In this document: positions 20,620-27,256 of the stretch, one piece after another
Numbering within the stretch: position 1 is the first letter of the stretch
How the letters are laid out: each line of letters begins with the position of its first letter
Assembly: GCF_000142905.1 (NCBI RefSeq)
Contig: NW_013657618.1
Coordinates: forward strand, 62,001 to 126,000
Length of the DNA stretch: 64,000 nt
Source: Thecamonas trahens ATCC 50062
Taxonomy: Eukaryota > Protista > Apusomonadida
Direction of reading: 5' to 3'
The notes under the pieces: model-generated
What the model was told of the DNA's origin: nothing
What the model saw: the letters and a program-made list of their open reading frames with translations, nothing else
Database searches by the model: none
Translations under genes and position numbers: made by a program

Positions 20620-21802
20620 ATGGCCAACATCGTCAATTTGGCGCCCGTCCGCGACGCGGCAGCCATCCTCTCCGCCGCCACCGACAACATCTTCCTCCCA
20701 GGCCGCGGTGTCGGCGACAACATCGCCGCCACCGCCGCTGCCATCGACGCCACCGCCGCCGCTGTCGACTCGTCCGCCACCGCCCTCGCCGCCTCGGTCG
20801 ACGGCCTTGCCGCCGCCTCGTCTGATCTTGGCGCCTCTGTCGAGCGCATTCCCGCCGCCGCCGCCCACGCTGCCGCGCCCTACCTTCGCCCGGCCGTCTA
20901 CGCCGCCGCCGTCATCACCGCTGCTATCCTCGCCTGCGCCATCGCCGCCGGCCTCCGCCTCGCCCACCTCGCCGCCCCTGCCGCCGCTTTCCTCCTTGCC
21001 CGCGCCATCTATGCCGCCCACGCCGCGCCAGCGCCCGCACCTGCGCCCACTTCGCCCTCACCCGTTGCCTCCGAGCTTGCCGCCGCCGCCACCGCGGTCG
21101 ACGCTGCTGCTACTGCCGCCGCTTGGGCCGTCCTCGCCGTAGCCCTCGTCGCCGCCCCGCTCGCCGACGCCGTCCTCGCGGGCCTCGCTCCGGCCGTCCT
21201 CGTCGCCGCCCCGCTCGCCGCCGCAGGCTACGGCCTCTGGACCTCGATCGATGCGCTGCATGCCTCGGTTGACGCCCGCCTTGCTGCTGCTGCCGCTACC
21301 GCCGAGACGGCCCGGCCTCGAGGCGGCGGCGGCAGCAGCAGCAGCGGCGGCGGCGTCGGGCGAGGCGGCGGCGGCGGCGCTGGTCGACGCCGCTCGCGCC
21401 GATATGGCCGCCAAGCTCGGTGGCGCCGTCACGGCGTGGAAGCCGCTTCCGGAGCCGCTGGCCCTCGTTCTCTCGCCCTCGCTCGATGCCATCCACCTCC
21501 CGCCCGAGGTTGTCGCCGTCGGGCCGACCTGGCTCCGCCTCGCCGTCTCGGTCACATCGGGCCACGCCGTCGACGGCCGCGTCGTCCTCTCGGTCGTGGC
21601 TGTCGAGAGCGGCGAGCGCATCATTGTCCGCCATCGGCTCTACCATGCGAACGCATACAACTCGTCGTCGACCATCGCAGATCTGGCCCTTGGCGCGCAG
21701 GCCGCATCGGCCTCACTTGCCTTGGTCATCGACGGTCCGGCCGCGCCGCACCTCGACGTCGTCGTCGACCTGCTGGCCTACGGCTTTGACGTCAACCTGT
21801 AG
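20620..21802 (+). CDS. Hypothetical membrane protein with C-terminal beta-rich domain (apparent +1 frameshift at ~21311)
   Basis: accATG MANIVNLAP; several hydrophobic Ala/Leu helices. Removing one C from CCC at 21311-21313 continues into frame 21251-21802 (GLEAAA...WLRLAVSV...VDLLAYGFDVNL), which has normal codon usage. Confidence 0.6.
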
Positions 21803-21867
21803 CAGGCGCATGTCGCAAGCTGGAGCGCCCCCGCGTGTGTGCATGTGTTGGTTTACGAAAAGGATCT

Positions 21868-24800
21868 CTACGTCCGTGCAGCAGGCGCCGGCGGCGCCGG
21901 GAGCGCCATGATGGCGGCGACCTGCATGCGAGCAATGTCAGCGCCCTCGACCGGGTGCTCGTCGAGCCAGGTAAGGATTTCCTGGCTCGACTCGGCAACC
22001 ATGGTATGGAGGGTGGCGAGCGCGTTGTAGCGGACCATGGCCGGGACGGGCTCGTTGGCGTCGGTCGGGCCGGCAAACGAGCCGGCCTCGGCGTCCGAGC
22101 CGGCAAAGAGCGACTGGGTGAAGAAGTTCTCGATCTTGGGAATGTTTGACTCGACGAGGTCATTAAGCTGGACCATAAACTCCTCCTTCTTGCCAAACTT
22201 GACGCCATTGGCCGCGTTCTGGATGACCTTGGCCACCAAGACGAGGTACCGGCGCTCGTCGCGCGAGACTTCGTCGCGCGAGATTAGGTATTCCTGCGGC
22301 GAGGTGATGGCCGGGCAGAAGAGGCGGAGGAAGAAGAACCCGCCCATGCCCTGCACCTCTTTGCTCGGGTACGCCGTCCCCACGGTCGTCGCCACGTAAG
22401 AGAGCACTTCCTTCAGCGAGCTCGGGCACCGTCCGGATGAGCGGTAGATCGACTCGAGGAAAGTCTGGCACGTTGTCATCAGCTTGTACTTGTTGACGTC
22501 CAGCGAGTCGGCATCGGTCAGCCGCGTCGGGTCCACCTCGAGGCCCGCTGTCCCTGTGTACCCGCCGTCGAGCTCGACCTCGTCGCCTCCTTCCTTGTTG
22601 CGCGTGCTGTGGACCTGGTTGTACTGGTACAGGCACTCGAGGACAAGGACTCCGATGGTCTGCCGCACATACTCCACCGCCCGGAGCTTGCCCCACGCCT
22701 GAAACAGCTTGGTCGCCGCCGAGTTCTGCCGGAACAGCGTTTCGGCGTTGAGCGTCACTGCAACCTCGTGCTCCACAAGCGCCTTGAGGAGCGAAAGTGT
22801 CAGGTTGTGCTCCTGCGTCACTGCCATCGCAGCCACAACTGCAGAGTACAGGTTGCGCTTCGGCACCACATCTGCGAGTGCCATGTACAGCGGGAGCGAG
22901 AGCGGGTCGGTCGCCACCACACCCTCCATCGGGGCGTACCGTGCCGACGAGCCCGACGTCGCCGCCACGCCCTCAAACATTGGCTCATTCCACCGTGGGA
23001 ACATCCGCGCCCACCCGTCGCTCGCCAGCGGCGGGCACATCAGCGCCGCAAAGTCAACCGACTTGTTCCGCCACTTGAAGAACAGCAGCACCACAATGGC
23101 CACCACAAGGAAGAGAAGCAGGCCGCCGCCGATGCCGGCGTACAGCGCAACCGACGAGCTCGACTTGGGATCGGCAAGCGCAGGCGTAGCCGCAGGTGAT
23201 GTTCCCGACCCGGCCGGCGGAGCCGGGTCAGAGCACCCAGGCGGGTTAATGAGCCCGGCCGCGCACGTCTCGCACGACGTGCCGTTGGTTGTCAGGCACG
23301 TTGCACACTGCGATGCGCAAATAGCCGCACACGCAGGCGCGTTGGCAAATCCGGCTGTGCACTCGGTGCACTCGTTCTCGTCCGCGACAGTGCACTTGGT
23401 CGCCGCGCACTTGGACGCACAAGACAGCGAGCACGTCGGCACATTCTCGAACCGAGGCAGGCACGCTGTGCAAGACGTCGCCGAGCCTGAACACTCGGCA
23501 CACGGGCTCTCGCACGGCACGCATGCAAGTGCCGTGGCGTTGTAGAAACTGCCCGAATTGCAGCTACATGAGCCGGCACTTGAACTCGCGATCGGATTCA
23601 GGTCGCTCGTCAGCAGAGAAATCTCTGCCGCAGTCAGCTCACGGTTCCACATCGCAAGGTTGTCAATCCACACCTCGCTGCGGAACGAGGTAAAGGTCGG
23701 GCCCCAGAAGCCGAGCGGCGCTGCATTGCCAGCTGGGAAAGAAGATGTAGAGAAGTAGCGGTCGTTCTGTCCCAAGACAAACTCGGTTGGGGTGAGCTGA
23801 GCAGTGTCGGCGATGTTGTTCAGAGTGTTGACCACGCCACCATGCACGGTGCCATTGATGTACACAAAGCCAGCGTTCGCTGCCGTCTCCGAGGCACGCT
23901 TCCAGGTCACGGTCAATTGGGTCCACTCCAACAACGAGTTGCGATCAATGTTGATGTCTGAAGAAAACACTACTGTATCGGCCGCAATGACGATGACGCG
24001 CACGTTGCCACCTGACATCCCCAACATAATGCACATGCCTTCGTTGCTGGCAACAGGTGTGATGCCTCGGGAGGGGCAAAACAGACCCATTCTTGCGTTC
24101 GACTCACTGCCGCCAGAAAACTCGATGTCGACCAGCTTGACCCACAACGAGATGGTCGCCTGCTTAACGTACTCGGAAGTTGTGCCCGACTCGCCCCAGA
24201 GCAGAGGCTCGGCCACAGGCTCCCCGTTCGCGAGGCGATGCGCAGCCATGACCGTAGTTGGCGGTGGTGACGAGCCTGAATGCTGTGTCACAAACGCCAC
24301 CGCTTGTCCCGCAACACCTGCCGGGAACGTCGGGCTGCCAGCGAGATTGAACGGCATGGCTGCGCCAGGCGCGACCGAGTTAGCCGTGCCCTCCATGGGA
24401 AAGTAGGCAGCAAGACCGTCGAGCAGACCAAAGTTGTACGAGCCACCAGCACAGCCCGGAGGCGTGTACGTCACTGTTCCCACCACCACCATCACCATCA
24501 TCCCAACCACGCCATGACAAGCACACCCATATGTGAGAGAGTGGGGGAGTGGGGGGGGGGGGGGAGGGAGAAGGGGGGGAGGGGGGAGGGGGGGAATCGC
24601 TGAAAAAGGCCGAAAGCGGCAATTGCCGCTATTTTGCTACCGAAACGGGAGAAGGGAGGGGAGGGGCAGGGCAGGGGGGGGGGCATGCAAGGGGAAGGGG
24701 AAAGGGGGGGGGGAGCGAGAGGGAGGCAAGGTTGCGTATGTGGGGGGGTAANNNNNNNNNNNNNNNNNNNNNNNNNNNNNNNNNNNNNNNNNNNNNNNNN

Positions 24801-25067
24801 NNNNNNNNNNNNNNNNNNNNNNNNNNNNNNNNNNNNNNNNNNNNNNNNNNNNNNNNNNNNNNNNNNNNNNNNNNNNNNNNNNNNNNNNNNNNNNNNNNNN
24901 NNNNNNNNNNNNNNNNNNNNNNNNNNNNNNNNNNNNNNNNNNNNNNNNNNNNNNNNNNNNNNNGGGGGAGGGGAGGGGGGGGGAGCGAGGGAGGACATAC
25001 CGGCTGCGTGGGTGCCTGCAAGAAGGACCATAAAGGCCATGGCCACAAGGAGCGCTCGTTGGCCCAT
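21868..25067 (-). CDS. Type I transmembrane receptor-like RasGAP (signal peptide, LamG/ConA-like domain, Cys-rich repeats, TM, RasGAP); exons 25067-25001 and 24473-21868
   Basis: Exon 1 MGQRALLVAMAFMVLLAGTHAA then G|GTATGT; acceptor GGAACAG|TG in matching phase 1. LamG: GLAAYFPMEG..ATISLWVK..WTQLTVTW..VYING..IDNLAMWNRELTAAEI. CxxC repeats at 23230-23570; TM at ~23077-23151; GAP motifs TLFRQNS, GGFFFLRLFCPAITSP, LVAKVIQNAAN, KEEFMVQLN. The intron contains an N-gap that could hide further exons. Confidence 0.88.
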
Positions 25068-25264
25068 TGCGCGTGAATTGGACGAAAAGTCGAGTATGGC
25101 GTGTTCCTGTTTGGAGTGGCCGGCCAAGGCCAAGAGCGGTCGAATCAGCATTGTCGGCGATGACGACCAGAACGACCCCCCCCCTCCCCCCCCACCCCCC
25201 AATGCCATCCAGGTTGGATAGCATGGTTTCTTGGTCAATCATGTGTTTGCCATCACGTTAATCG

Positions 25265-27256
25265 ATGGAGACTGTACGAGATTGGCGTACAACTCGCCAC
25301 GGCCATGCCGGAACAGGTCGCACACACAGCACGTTGGATGTCATGTGGTGGGGAATGAGATGGGCGGGATGTGATGGCACTGCGATGGTCTTGACGAGAG
25401 TGTGCGGTGGGACGGGGACGACGACAGGAGCAAGAGCGGGTGTTGGCTCCGAGCACGAGGTACGCAACTGGGCTCACACACCACACGCCTCGGACACCCC
25501 CCCCCAAGCTATTAGCAGCACGACCCGTCTCGGGAAGAAGATGTCGCGGCGACTGGGTGGGCACGGAGCAGCGGCGCGACTTGCGCGGCAAGTGCGGCGG
25601 GCGGGAGGGCGGTCCGGGTGGGAGGACGGTGGCGGGTTGGGAAGCGGTAACGACGACATGCTGGCCGACGAGATGGAGAGCGCGGTGAAGGAGATGGCGC
25701 AGGAGCGGCGGGTGACGCAGTCGTTGGAGCAAGTCTTTGCCCGCAAGGTGCGGACAGATGACGAGCTGCAAGCCATCTACGACCTGGCCAAGCCGCTGCA
25801 GGGCTTTGACAAGTACGCCGAGTACACCAAGCGTGAGCTGTGCAAGGTCATGCACTACGAGCGGTACGACGGCGTGGCCAAGCGAGTGGTCTTCTACGAG
25901 GGCGACCCGCCCGACGGCTGGTATTTAGTGCTCTCGGGCAAGCTCGATGGCAAGAAGCTGCCGCCGGATTCGGACATTGACGAGCTCAAGGCCATGTCGG
26001 CCGACATCGAGTCGCTCTCCACCGCCGTCTTTACTCTTGGTCGCGGCAAGGCCTTTGGCGAGGGCGCCCTGCAGCGGTCGTCGGGCTCGGCCACGCCGGG
26101 CCTCCGTGCCGCCACCATTGTGGCCAACGAGCCGGTCGAGCTGCTCAAGGTCGGCCTGGAGGACTACATCAAGCTGCTGCAGATCGAGGAGGACAAGAAC
26201 ATCGAGGCCACGGTGGCGTTTCTCAAGCGCATGCCGCTGTTTGCAGACCCCGAGTGGACGCACGGCAAGCTGCGCAACGTGGCCCAGACCTTCACCGTGG
26301 CGCAGTACATGCCGAACAAGCTCATCTACCAGCAGAGTGTGACCCACGGCGACGCGTTCTACATTGTCAAGTCGGGCACCTGCCGTATCGTCAAGGAGCT
26401 GGACATCCCGTACACCGACGCAGGTGGGCGGACCCGGATCAAAAAGGTCTTCCTCCACATCAACACGCTCGAGGAGGGCGCGCACTTTGGCGAGTATGCC
26501 ATCATCGAGGGCTGCCGCCGCTCGTCCTCGGTATGCTCCGTCTCCAACGTCCTGCTCTACGTCATGCCCTCGGCCGAGTTCAAAAAGTACATTGTCGACA
26601 AGACTCGCCAGAAGCTTCTCGATCGCATCAAGACCTATCCGTCCGAAGCTGACATCATCAAGTCATACAAGCAGCAGCAAGAGTGGAACCGCTACAAGCG
26701 CAAGCTCGTCACTTCCACTCTCTCGTACGGCGCCCGCGCCACAACCTCGTTTGCCTCCACATTTCGCTCGACAACCTCGGCTCCATCGTCAGTTCTCACT
26801 CAGTCGCTCGCCGACGCCAAGCGCTCGTCGTACGGCGCGCCGCTGCCGGCAACAGCATCGCTCTCGCGACAACGGCCGCGGCGAGCGCTCGACAGCGACC
26901 GGTCCAGTCGGCCCGGCCGCCGCCGCCGGGTAGGCGCGGGTACCGCATCCGTGGCCGCGGGAAGCGCAGGTGCCAGCGACGACGACCCGCCAGCAACTGA
27001 CCGCCCAGCAACCGGGCGCACTCGCTCGCGCTGGCTGCCCGGCGCCCGGTCGATCGACGCCAAGCTCCTCCGCGAGCAGGGCGTCCGCGGCGGCGGCTCG
27101 CTGAGAGCCGGCACCGTCAAGCCGTCGCTCGTGCCGGCCGGCCGGTCATCGGTCTCGCTCGCGCCGGCGCTGGCGTACCAGCCGAGCTCGGCTACGTGGA
27201 GCAGTGCCGGCGTCCGGTCGTCGCGGCGTGCAGCCGCGGCGTCGTGGGCAGAGTAA
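25265..27256 (+). CDS. Tandem cyclic-nucleotide-binding domain protein (CNBD2-like); 5' exon structure uncertain
   Basis: Two CNB domains: VFYEGDPPDGWYLVLSG..GKAFGEGAL..RAATIVA and IYQQ..DAFYIVKSG..GAHFGEYAI..RSSSVCS; basic disordered tail. A possible intron ends at ~25508 (GGCTCAC branch, AAG). Confidence 0.85.
   Translation: METVRDWRTTRHGHAGTGRTHSTLDVMWWGMRWAGCDGTAMVLTRVCGGTGTTTGARAGVGSEHEVRNWAHTPHASDTPPQAISSTTRLGKKMSRRLGGHGAAARLARQVRRAGGRSGWEDGGGLGSGNDDMLADEMESAVKEMAQERRVTQSLEQVFARKVRTDDELQAIYDLAKPLQGFDKYAEYTKRELCKVMHYERYDGVAKRVVFYEGDPPDGWYLVLSGKLDGKKLPPDSDIDELKAMSADIESLSTAVFTLGRGKAFGEGALQRSSGSATPGLRAATIVANEPVELLKVGLEDYIKLLQIEEDKNIEATVAFLKRMPLFADPEWTHGKLRNVAQTFTVAQYMPNKLIYQQSVTHGDAFYIVKSGTCRIVKELDIPYTDAGGRTRIKKVFLHINTLEEGAHFGEYAIIEGCRRSSSVCSVSNVLLYVMPSAEFKKYIVDKTRQKLLDRIKTYPSEADIIKSYKQQQEWNRYKRKLVTSTLSYGARATTSFASTFRSTTSAPSSVLTQSLADAKRSSYGAPLPATASLSRQRPRRALDSDRSSRPGRRRRVGAGTASVAAGSAGASDDDPPATDRPATGRTRSRWLPGARSIDAKLLREQGVRGGGSLRAGTVKPSLVPAGRSSVSLAPALAYQPSSATWSSAGVRSSRRAAAASWAE

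What the first reader, a model, noticed from the sequence alone, without database searches (positions are those of the whole stretch)
21868..25067. Receptor RasGAP: lectin-like ectodomain wired directly to an NF1-like Ras off-switch
Seen: signal peptide (exon 1), LamG/ConA-like domain, about four furin/VSP-like CxxC repeats, a Pro/Ser stalk, one TM helix followed by KWRNK, then an uninterrupted RasGAP with arginine finger TLFR(22729-22731)QNS, FLRxxxPAIxxP and AKVIQN..KEEFM. Established: the familiar TM receptors with RasGAP folds are plexins, which have Sema/PSI/IPT ectodomains and a GAP split by an RBD; NF1/Ira/p120-type GAPs are cytosolic. Inference: this is an independently assembled receptor class that turns Ras off on extracellular (possibly glycan or prey) binding, a GAP counterpart of protist receptor kinases, and possibly one of an expanded family.
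Basis: partly seen in the sequence, partly recalled or inferred. Interest (0 to 1): 0.88.

Follow-up and report, generated by a model that had tools for sequence, protein, structure and literature searches.

The report
Membrane receptor carrying a Ras off-switch
The marine protist Thecamonas trahens makes a single-pass cell-surface protein with a lectin-like (LamG) head outside and a complete Ras-inactivating (RasGAP) enzyme inside, and it belongs to an old family of such receptor GAPs, found in apusomonads, many amoebae, a nucleariid and Anaeramoeba, that I could not find described in the searched literature.

Summary
The gene is Thecamonas trahens AMSG_10622 (890 aa, "uncharacterized protein").

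- **Gap and splice:** the N gap lies inside the only intron. RNA-library contigs from two studies join 25001 to 24473 (GT..AG), so the coding sequence is not affected.
- **Product:** signal peptide, LamG-like domain, three furin-like Cys units (six CxxC), Pro/Ser stalk, one TM helix, KWRNK, a ~95-aa juxtamembrane segment, and an uninterrupted RasGAP (Pfam 3e-24). Arg finger R604, FLR R739 and K771 are intact.
- **Closest solved relatives:** NF1 and p120GAP. No plexin is found by sequence.

It is not a one-off. At least nine distinct Thecamonas genes put FN3, disintegrin, PSI/IPT or cadherin-like ectodomains on the same TM-juxtamembrane-GAP cassette. 56 of the 101 closest GAP relatives with enough upstream sequence carry a TM at the same spacing (Amoebozoa, Lithocolla, Anaeramoeba).

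The TM-linked GAP domains form a strongly supported clade apart from NF1. A single origin is not rejected (AU p 0.67). Only plexin structures cover the modelled juxtamembrane segment.

Ligand-controlled Ras inactivation is inferred, not shown. This scan had already noted the same family on other DNA of this genome. No paper describing it was found.

The parts
25001..25067 (-). Exon 1: start codon and signal peptide (MGQRALLVAMAFMVLLAGTHAA plus the first base of codon 23). The 5' UTR reaches at least 25095.
   Evidence: Sequence. Hydrophobic N-terminus, KD 2.15. Splice joint seen in contigs of two runs, and the X2 contig extends to 25095. The product equals P0001.
24474..25000 (-). The only intron (GT..AG), nominally 527 nt. 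It contains the assembly gap 24752-24963 and C/G-rich low-complexity tracts.
   Evidence: The joint 24473|25001 is present in X1 and X2 contigs.
21868..24473 (-). Exon 2: residues 23-890 plus the TAG stop (21868-21870). Transcript contigs run past the stop to at least 21841.
23581..24459 (-). LamG/ConA-like jelly-roll domain, about residues 28-320. The Pfam Laminin_G_3 stretch covers residues 126-308.
   Evidence: Pfam E 2.6e-4, below the cut-off. The same hit is found in orthologue P0002. ESM Atlas: 26 of 30 feature hits are Laminin_G_3 clusters at 0.96, and structure TM-scores are 0.58-0.66. My own AF2 model failed.
23233..23568 (-). Cys-rich region, residues 325-436: three furin-like units, six CxxC, 21 Cys. 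All Cys are conserved in the orthologue.
   Evidence: There are only weak leads to Furin-like_2/VSP/GF_recep_IV (ESM 0.83-0.85) and no Pfam hit.
23146..23232 (-). Pro/Ser/Ala-rich stalk, residues 437-465.
   Evidence: Translation.
23077..23145 (-). Single transmembrane helix, residues about 466-488.
   Evidence: KD 19-residue mean 3.03 at 470-488. It aligns with the TM of 60 or more relatives at a fixed distance from the GAP.
22792..23076 (-). Stop-transfer KWRNK plus the juxtamembrane segment (residues 489-583), up to the start of the Pfam RasGAP match. It includes the family's D-F motif region. From about residue 524 (nt 22971 downward) it already forms the N-terminal helices of the GAP fold.
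   Evidence: AF2 pLDDT 87-94 for model residues 11-40. Family alignment. Only plexin chains align with model residues about 2-45. p120GAP aligns from model residue 36.
22207..22791 (-). RasGAP catalytic domain by Pfam, residues 584-778. The structural GAP fold spans about residues 524-889.
22729..22731 (-). Arginine finger R604 (TLFRQNS).
   Evidence: It aligns with the NF1 arginine-finger motif (TLFRGNS). Invariant in 38 TM-RasGAPs.
22324..22326 (-). Second catalytic arginine R739 (FLRLFCPAITSP).
   Evidence: F737, L738 and R739 are invariant.
22228..22230 (-). K771 of the AKVIQN motif (the Ras-binding lysine of NF1/p120 type GAPs).
   Evidence: invariant.

Best explanation
AMSG_10622 is a genuine type I plasma-membrane receptor.

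Shown:
- A cleavable signal peptide, a LamG-like domain, furin-like Cys repeats and a stalk lie outside the membrane.
- One TM helix follows.
- Inside is a canonical, catalytically complete RasGAP domain, tied to the membrane by a short structured juxtamembrane segment.
- It is the LamG-headed member of an old family of receptor RasGAPs. These share one TM-juxtamembrane-GAP cassette and differ in adhesion- or recognition-type ectodomains.

Inferred: the GAP sits permanently next to lipid-anchored Ras-family GTPases. Engagement of the ectodomain by a surface or soluble ligand (glycan or protein on substrate, prey or another cell) changes clustering or orientation of the cytoplasmic part. This locally raises or lowers GTP hydrolysis on Ras (or Rap). 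Local GTPase inactivation would switch off actin-driven protrusion or cup formation at the site of contact, as plexins do through Rap and as soluble RasGAPs do in Dictyostelium feeding cups.
For: - One transcript, one frame: the splice is confirmed and contigs tile from GAP through TM and ectodomain to the signal exon. The product is identical to the deposited protein.
- A 36%-identical orthologue with the same collinear architecture sits in one uninterrupted ORF on an independent contig.
- Pfam RasGAP is full length.
- NF1 GRD scores 5.8e-25 and p120GAP 4.6e-20 by sequence. The family profile scores 6e-70 and 7.5e-58.
- R604, F737-L738-R739 and K771 are invariant in 38 family members.
- Family evidence: a TM lies 48-76 aa before the same GAP position in 60 sequences. 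A 57-row clade with SH-aLRT 100 is all TM-linked. A single clade of all 66 is not rejected, p-AU 0.67.
- Ectodomains in the family are TIG, PSI, cadherin-like, SibA-Ig, LamG, EGF, C-type lectin, disintegrin and FN3.
- Context: soluble RasGAPs shape feeding cups in Dictyostelium (PMC4374526).
Against: - No biochemical evidence exists for GAP activity, substrate, ligand or regulation.
- Signal peptide and TM rest on hydropathy and sequence rules, because SignalP and DeepTMHMM were not available.
- The LamG call is below Pfam's threshold and my ectodomain model failed (pLDDT 35.6).
- The RNA evidence is assembled contigs from metatranscriptomes at 95-99% identity plus one run whose RNA status is a guess. 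It shows the joined form but not expression level.
- The tree is a 'quick' search. The TM group was named partly after seeing the tree.
Confidence: 0.72

Rival explanations
1. It is a constitutively active, membrane-tethered GAP or adhesion molecule. The ectodomain only places or anchors the protein (for example at substrate contacts). The GAP sets a basal low Ras level there, without ligand-dependent regulation.
For: Membrane tethering alone brings a GAP to its lipid-anchored substrate. Family ectodomains are mostly adhesion-type modules such as cadherin-like, SibA-Ig, FN3, disintegrin and EGF. No regulatory domain is seen in the cytoplasmic part.
Against: The juxtamembrane segment is conserved in length and motif across distant taxa, and its membrane-proximal part (model residues 11-40) is modelled with high confidence. 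That suggests coupling between TM and GAP, as in plexins.
Confidence: 0.3
2. The physiological substrate is Rap or another Ras-family GTPase rather than Ras proper, as in plexins and partly in SynGAP. The 'Ras off-switch' label would then be wrong in detail.
Against: The best sequence and structure matches are the Ras-specific NF1 and p120GAP. The NF1/p120 Ras-contact motifs are kept.
Confidence: 0.25
3. It is a non-catalytic scaffold. The GAP fold binds a GTPase without stimulating hydrolysis, as in IQGAP1/2.
For: IQGAP GRDs share the fold.
Against: The arginine finger, FLR arginine and lysine are invariant across 38 members. IQGAPs are far weaker matches (2.7e-5 against 5.8e-25).
Confidence: 0.05
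4. It is a gene-model or assembly artefact: two genes fused across the gap, or a wrong first exon.
For: An N gap sits between exon 1 and exon 2. One neighbouring family model (P0021) does look like a fusion of two tandem genes.
Against: The joint is seen in contigs of two runs. TM, ectodomain and GAP lie in one stop-free exon. The orthologue has the same order, including a signal peptide, in one ORF.
Confidence: 0.02

Closest known systems
Plexins (animal and choanoflagellate semaphorin receptors)
   Different: This gene has no Sema, PSI or IPT domain. Its GAP is not split by an RBD. There is no Plexin_cytopl match and no plexin hit by sequence, even with a family profile at E<=10. Identity to plexins is 10-14%. 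The catalytic core is closer to p120/NF1. Plexins are held to have arisen in the choanoflagellate plus animal ancestor (PMC6374515), whereas this family is in apusomonads, Amoebozoa, a nucleariid and Anaeramoeba.
Neurofibromin (NF1) GAP-related domain and p120RasGAP
   Same: These are the best sequence and structure matches. The arginine finger, FLR and K motifs align.
   Different: Both are cytosolic multidomain proteins. NF1 has Sec14/CRAL_TRIO-PH and is about 2800 aa. Thecamonas has its own NF1 (L019) and a smaller RasGAP+CRAL_TRIO form (L002). The receptor clade lies apart from the NF1 clade.
Receptor-type enzymes of protists (transmembrane kinases of Entamoeba and other protists; receptor adenylate cyclases of trypanosomatids)
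   Same: The logic is the same: a variable Cys-rich or lectin-like ectodomain, one TM, and a cytoplasmic signalling enzyme. These exist as expanded families (PMC10463195 and PMC7719234, known to me only from title and abstract).
   Different: The enzyme here is a GTPase-activating domain, which gives a direct off-switch without a kinase or second messenger.
Dictyostelium SibA-type adhesion receptors
   Same: Some family members (not this gene) carry SibA-like Ig and cadherin-like ectodomains.
   Different: From my own knowledge, Sib proteins have a short talin-binding tail and no GAP. This gene has a LamG head.

Membership tests
RasGAP superfamily (Pfam PF00616) | Profile match above the curated cut-off over the whole domain | tested here: met
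   86.5 bits against 28.3, positions 1-207 of 207, one stretch.
RasGAP superfamily (Pfam PF00616) | Arginine finger (FR.NS), FLR..PA motif and K...Q..AN motif | tested here: met
   R604, R739 and K771 align to NF1. They are invariant in 38 relatives.
RasGAP superfamily (Pfam PF00616) | All-helical GAP fold | tested here: met
RasGAP superfamily (Pfam PF00616) | Stimulates GTP hydrolysis on a Ras-family GTPase | not testable with these tools
   Needs a biochemical assay.
Receptor RasGAP clade (TM-juxtamembrane-GAP cassette; defined here) | TM helix at a fixed distance (about 130 aa) before the arginine finger | tested here: met
   TM 470-488, R604. 60 relatives have a TM 48-76 aa before the aligned position of residue 541.
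Receptor RasGAP clade (TM-juxtamembrane-GAP cassette; defined here) | GAP domain falls in the TM-linked clade | tested here: met
   57-row clade, SH-aLRT 100, all TM-linked. One clade of all 66 is not rejected, p-AU 0.67.
Receptor RasGAP clade (TM-juxtamembrane-GAP cassette; defined here) | Juxtamembrane P-D-F..phi..G and LE.LL motifs | tested here: inconclusive
   This gene and its orthologue keep only a degenerate form (VDFAALM.., PDGWARMF).
Plexin | [quoted passage not shown] | tested here: not met
   No such Pfam match at E<=1.
Plexin | Plexin-type cytoplasmic domain (PF08337) with the GAP split by an RBD | tested here: not met
   There is no PF08337 match and the GAP is one stretch. No plexin is hit by the family profile at E<=10.
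Neurofibromin | GRD followed by Sec14/CRAL_TRIO-PH in a protein of about 2800 aa, and placement in the NF1 clade | tested here: not met
   No CRAL_TRIO match. The genome's NF1 is a different gene, L019. The clades are separate.
LamG / ConA-like lectin-glucanase superfamily | Profile match above the cut-off, or a confident jelly-roll model | tested here: inconclusive
   Laminin_G_3 scores 21.6 bits against 27.6 in both this protein and P0002. ESM Atlas features score 0.96 and structure TM-scores are 0.58-0.66. My own AF2 model failed.
Furin-like / VSP Cys-rich repeats | Profile match to PF15913, PF03302 or PF00757 | tested here: not met
   There is no Pfam hit, only the CxxC pattern and ESM leads at 0.83-0.85. 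It resembles this family but membership is not shown.
Type I membrane protein | Cleavable signal peptide, one TM, positive-inside flank | tested here: met
   Hydropathy and sequence rules only. The orthologue also starts with a signal-like peptide. SignalP and DeepTMHMM were not available.

The most novel reading that the evidence does not exclude
Receptor RasGAPs are an ancient class of ligand-regulated receptors, at least as old as Amorphea. They wire adhesion or glycan recognition directly to local Ras/Rap inactivation. Animal plexins would be a late, divergent offshoot of this class that gained a Sema head and an RBD insert. The plexin cytoplasmic design would then predate choanoflagellates by a long way.
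Probability: 0.25. Interest if true: 0.88.

Novelty: new variant of a known kind. Interest (0 to 1): 0.72.

Why it matters
Textbook Ras control runs from receptor through adaptor to a soluble GEF or GAP. The only known receptors with a GAP fold are plexins, which are thought to be a choanozoan invention.

This gene and its relatives show that a canonical NF1/p120-type RasGAP was fused to a membrane anchor early. It was then combined with many different adhesion and lectin heads in gliding and amoeboid phagotrophs.

That gives a simple, testable one-protein route from surface contact to Ras inactivation. Such a route could underlie contact repulsion, prey discrimination or cup closure. It also gives a concrete candidate ancestor, or a convergent twin, for the plexin cytoplasmic region. 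The small size and unsplit GAP of this LamG member make it a convenient representative for biochemistry.

Tried and rejected
- **Whole paralogue ORFs.** Paralogues were therefore read only within +/-1.5 kb of the GAP hit.
- **Ectodomain paralogues in this genome.** None were found; only the gene itself.
- **LamG-part homologues in 5.8 billion proteins.** Only the protein itself was found. The word-based search missed even P0002.
- **Cytoplasmic-part search.** It gave few hits.
- **AF2 of the ectodomain with two sequences.** pLDDT was 35.6, which is unusable, so no fold search was run on it.
- **Complex prediction.** A homodimer of the cytoplasmic part was sent five times and the machine was unreachable each time. 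There is no result.
- **van Dam et al. 2011 on Ras regulators.** The paper is not held, and one search was malformed.
- **Literature searches.** Searches for transmembrane, receptor, receptor-like or plexin-like RasGAP found nothing describing this class.
- **Rejected readings.** These were a plexin orthologue, an NF1 orthologue, a gene-fusion artefact and a pseudo-GAP; the reasons are under Membership tests and Rival explanations.

Searches used exon 2 by reference, or the database protein P0001 that a search returned. No typed joined sequence was handed to any tool. The exons were joined only inside a script, to check identity with P0001.
Full report
**Identity and the gap**

The window is from Thecamonas trahens ATCC 50062 (an apusomonad). 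The minus-strand frame 21868-24474 is 100% identical to AMSG_10622, an 890-aa 'uncharacterized protein / Ras-GAP domain-containing protein'.

The program's warning was tested first. The N run 24752-24963 lies inside a GT..AG intron (24474-25000), between a 67-nt first exon (25001-25067) and the 2606-nt second exon.

Logan contigs of four RNA-library runs were laid on 21700-25300. Two runs from two studies (X1, a seawater metatranscriptome, and X2, whose RNA label is a guess) contain the joint 24473|25001 with CT..AC on the plus strand.
- One X1 contig covers 22995-24473 plus 25001-25064. That is juxtamembrane, TM, whole ectodomain and signal exon.
- One X2 contig covers 22035-23153, from GAP to TM.
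- Another X2 contig covers 24140-24473 plus 25001-25095.
- Other contigs reach 21841, beyond the stop.

The gap therefore does not touch the coding sequence. The spliced product equals the deposited protein exactly.

**Anatomy (P0001 numbering)**

| Part | Residues | Evidence |
|---|---|---|
| Signal-like N-terminus | 1-22 | KD 2.15 |
| LamG-like region | ~28-320 | |
| Cys-rich region | 325-436 | three furin-like units, six CxxC, 21 Cys, all kept in the orthologue |
| Pro/Ser stalk | 437-465 | |
| TM helix | 470-488 | KD 3.03, followed by KWRNK |
| RasGAP (Pfam) | 584-778 | E 3e-24, 86.5 bits vs 28.3, profile 1-207/207, one stretch |

R739 lies in FLRLFCPAITSP and K771 in AKVIQN. The ectodomain has 24 Cys and three N-x-S/T sites.

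Pfam Laminin_G_3 scores E 2.6e-4, below its cut-off. Three things support it:
- The orthologue gives the same sub-threshold hit independently.
- 26 of 30 ESM Atlas feature neighbours are Laminin_G_3 clusters at 0.96, and the Atlas model aligns to such clusters at TM 0.58-0.66.
- Four other family members carry clear Laminin_G_3 domains, best E 8e-15.

My own two-sequence AF2 model of the ectodomain failed, with pLDDT 35.6. The Cys-rich part matches no Pfam model, and the ESM leads to Furin-like_2/VSP are weak at 0.83-0.85.

**The enzyme**

By sequence the closest solved chains are:
- NF1 GRD: 5.8e-25
- p120GAP: 4.6e-20
- SynGAP: 4.8e-15
- IQGAP2: 2.7e-5

 A profile of 33 relatives scores NF1 at 6e-70, p120GAP at 7.5e-58 and IQGAP at 6e-27. 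It finds no plexin even at E<=10.

The cytoplasmic 402 residues fold with pLDDT 89.7 and pTM 0.89. Foldseek ranks p120GAP and NF1 first (E about 1e-12) and plexins at about 1e-5.

|---|---|---|---|---|
| p120GAP | 29.6 | 4.0 | 315 | 36-401 |
| NF1 | 27.9 | 2.8 | 295 | 48-396 |
| Plexins | 24-25.7 | 3.7-4.8 | 343-362 | starts at 2-12 |

The catalytic core is therefore of the p120/NF1 kind. The juxtamembrane segment has a structural counterpart only in plexins. It is modelled at pLDDT 87-94 for model residues 11-40. That segment comes from a predicted model, so this is a lead and not proof.

**It is a family**

Family in this genome. The genome has about 37 RasGAP loci. Within +/-1.5 kb of the GAP hit, the following show a strong TM helix upstream of the GAP:
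- L006: FN3 repeats.
- L007: cadherin-like sequence, weaker TM.
- L021 and L026: disintegrin repeats, in tandem on one contig.
- L023, L027 and L029: PSI plus IPT/TIG, with the GAP interrupted by a helical insert of roughly 100 aa.
- L030: PSI repeats.
- This gene.

The same genome also has a true NF1 (L019: CRAL_TRIO_2, 2919-aa frame), a smaller RasGAP+CRAL_TRIO form (L002) and an IQGAP-like gene (L001). The LamG ectodomain itself has no paralogue in the genome.

Family outside this genome. P0002 (953 aa, 36% identical, collinear from LamG to the C-terminus) lies in one uninterrupted ORF on a 3.4-kb Logan contig. A full HMMER scan of 1.84 billion representatives gave 3597 hits. Among the best 150 plus the paralogues, 60 have a TM 48-76 aa before the position aligned to residue 541. 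Five more have Gly/Ala-rich TMs that my threshold missed. Of the 101 representatives with at least 110 aa upstream of the GAP, 56 carry the TM.

Named members come from:
- Amoebozoa: Balamuthia mandrillaris ('Ras GTPase activating protein ira2'), Pelomyxa schiedti, Mastigamoeba balamuthi, Soliformovum, Gocevia, Rhizamoeba, Luapelamoeba, Cavostelium and Clastostelium.
- The nucleariid Lithocolla globosa.
- The metamonad Anaeramoeba ignava.

Conserved cassette. The alignment shows TM, a basic stop-transfer, a P-D-F..phi..G motif, LE.LL, TE.D..AKALVY.FE, and then TLFR.NS. This gene keeps only a degenerate form of the juxtamembrane motifs. F603, R604, F737-L738-R739, K771 and K785-E786 are invariant in 38 full-length members.

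Ectodomain tally in those 38 members:

| Ectodomain family | Members |
|---|---|
| TIG | 10 |
| Cadherin-like (Cadherin_4) | 5 |
| SibA-like Ig | 4 |
| PSI | 4 |
| Laminin_G_3 | 4 |
| C-type lectin | 2 |
| EGF types | 1-2 each |
| Disintegrin | 1 |
| FN3 | 1 |

Phylogeny. An IQ-TREE quick tree was built from 128 GAP domains and 254 columns under LG+C20 PMSF.
- It gives a 57-row clade with SH-aLRT 100 that holds this gene and seven Thecamonas paralogues. Every row in it is TM-linked.
- The NF1-type clade (SH-aLRT 99, proteins up to about 3700 aa) and Thecamonas NF1 lie elsewhere.
- Holding all 66 TM-linked domains as one clade gives a better likelihood than the free quick search (+11.9) and is not rejected (p-AU 0.668).
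- This gene's sister is P0002 (SH-aLRT 99). Next come the Lithocolla EGF-headed protein and the Thecamonas FN3 and disintegrin members. That pattern fits ectodomain shuffling on a fixed cassette.

Caveats: the search was quick, long branches were present (L030, L004), no plexins were in the tree, and the group was defined partly after seeing the tree.

**Mechanism**

Shown: the architecture, intact catalytic motifs under conservation, the canonical fold, and a conserved membrane-proximal linker.

Inferred: the protein is a plasma-membrane receptor whose GAP acts on lipid-anchored Ras-family GTPases. Ectodomain engagement would alter clustering or orientation and thus local GTPase inactivation. 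Plexins work this way through Rap. In Dictyostelium, soluble RasGAPs such as NF1 shape macropinocytic and phagocytic cups (PMC4374526).

The main rival is a constitutive tether or adhesion role. The substrate (Ras or Rap) is open.

**Novelty**

Full-text searches found no description of transmembrane or receptor RasGAPs outside plexins. The plexin-origin study searched by Sema domain and places the origin in the choanoflagellate plus animal ancestor (PMC6374515).

The proteins exist in databases under generic names only. This scan has noted, and partly followed up, other members of the same family elsewhere in this genome (s1-746496, s1-756529, s1-758354). I saw those PSI/IPT members independently.

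I class the finding as a new variant of a known kind, that is, a receptor with a GAP fold. The LamG-headed, unsplit-GAP member described here is one of the smallest complete members seen and a convenient representative.

Noticed in passing
L023 (G000:C12:~197186), L027 (C8:~461476), L029 (C37:~299329): These are PSI + IPT/TIG + TM + RasGAP genes. A helical insert of roughly 100 aa or more interrupts the GAP between the arginine-finger half and the FLR half. That is the topological place of the plexin RBD. They have no Sema domain and hit PF00616, not Plexin_cytopl.
   Followed up: partly
L021 and L026 (G000:C40:~69803 and ~73479); protein P0021: Two tandem disintegrin-repeat TM-RasGAP genes. 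The 2090-aa database model P0021 contains both GAP units and the L026 TM, so it looks like a fused gene model.
   Followed up: partly
L024 (G000:C35:~269150) and L014 (G000:C46:~15612): Near-identical partial copies of the L023 receptor RasGAP. One is cut by an N run. The other has two TGA stops inside the GAP match. They may be assembly duplicates, haplotigs or decaying copies.
   Followed up: no
L006 (G000:C15:~256562); L007 (C16:~154947); L030 (C14:~107613): Further receptor RasGAPs. L006 has FN3 repeats. L007 has a cadherin-like ectodomain with a weak TM. L030 has PSI repeats, a long acidic linker (TM about 190 aa from the GAP) and a very divergent GAP.
   Followed up: partly
Proteins P0005, P0006, P0011, P0016, P0026 (metagenome/ENA/Logan): A sister group of receptors with SibA-like Ig or cadherin-like ectodomains, one TM, and TWO RasGAP domains in tandem (tandem copies resolved for P0006, P0011, P0016 and P0026). 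The second copies form their own clade.
   Followed up: partly
window 24483-24603 (intron): X1 shows very high contig depth (about 2300) over the C/G-rich low-complexity tract of the intron. It comes from many 31-44-nt contigs and is most likely cross-mapping of simple sequence, not expression.
   Followed up: no
window 21700-25300, runs X1 and X3-X9: Contigs 95-100% identical to this Thecamonas gene occur in seawater, subsurface and marine metatranscriptomes of several studies. T. trahens or very close strains are therefore transcriptionally active in those samples.
   Followed up: no
window 25265-27256 (+): A long open frame with two cyclic-nucleotide-binding-like regions starts about 200 bp from the RasGAP start codon on the other strand, in head-to-head arrangement. 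One cytosolic RasGAP paralogue (L028) itself carries a cNMP-binding domain.
   Followed up: no
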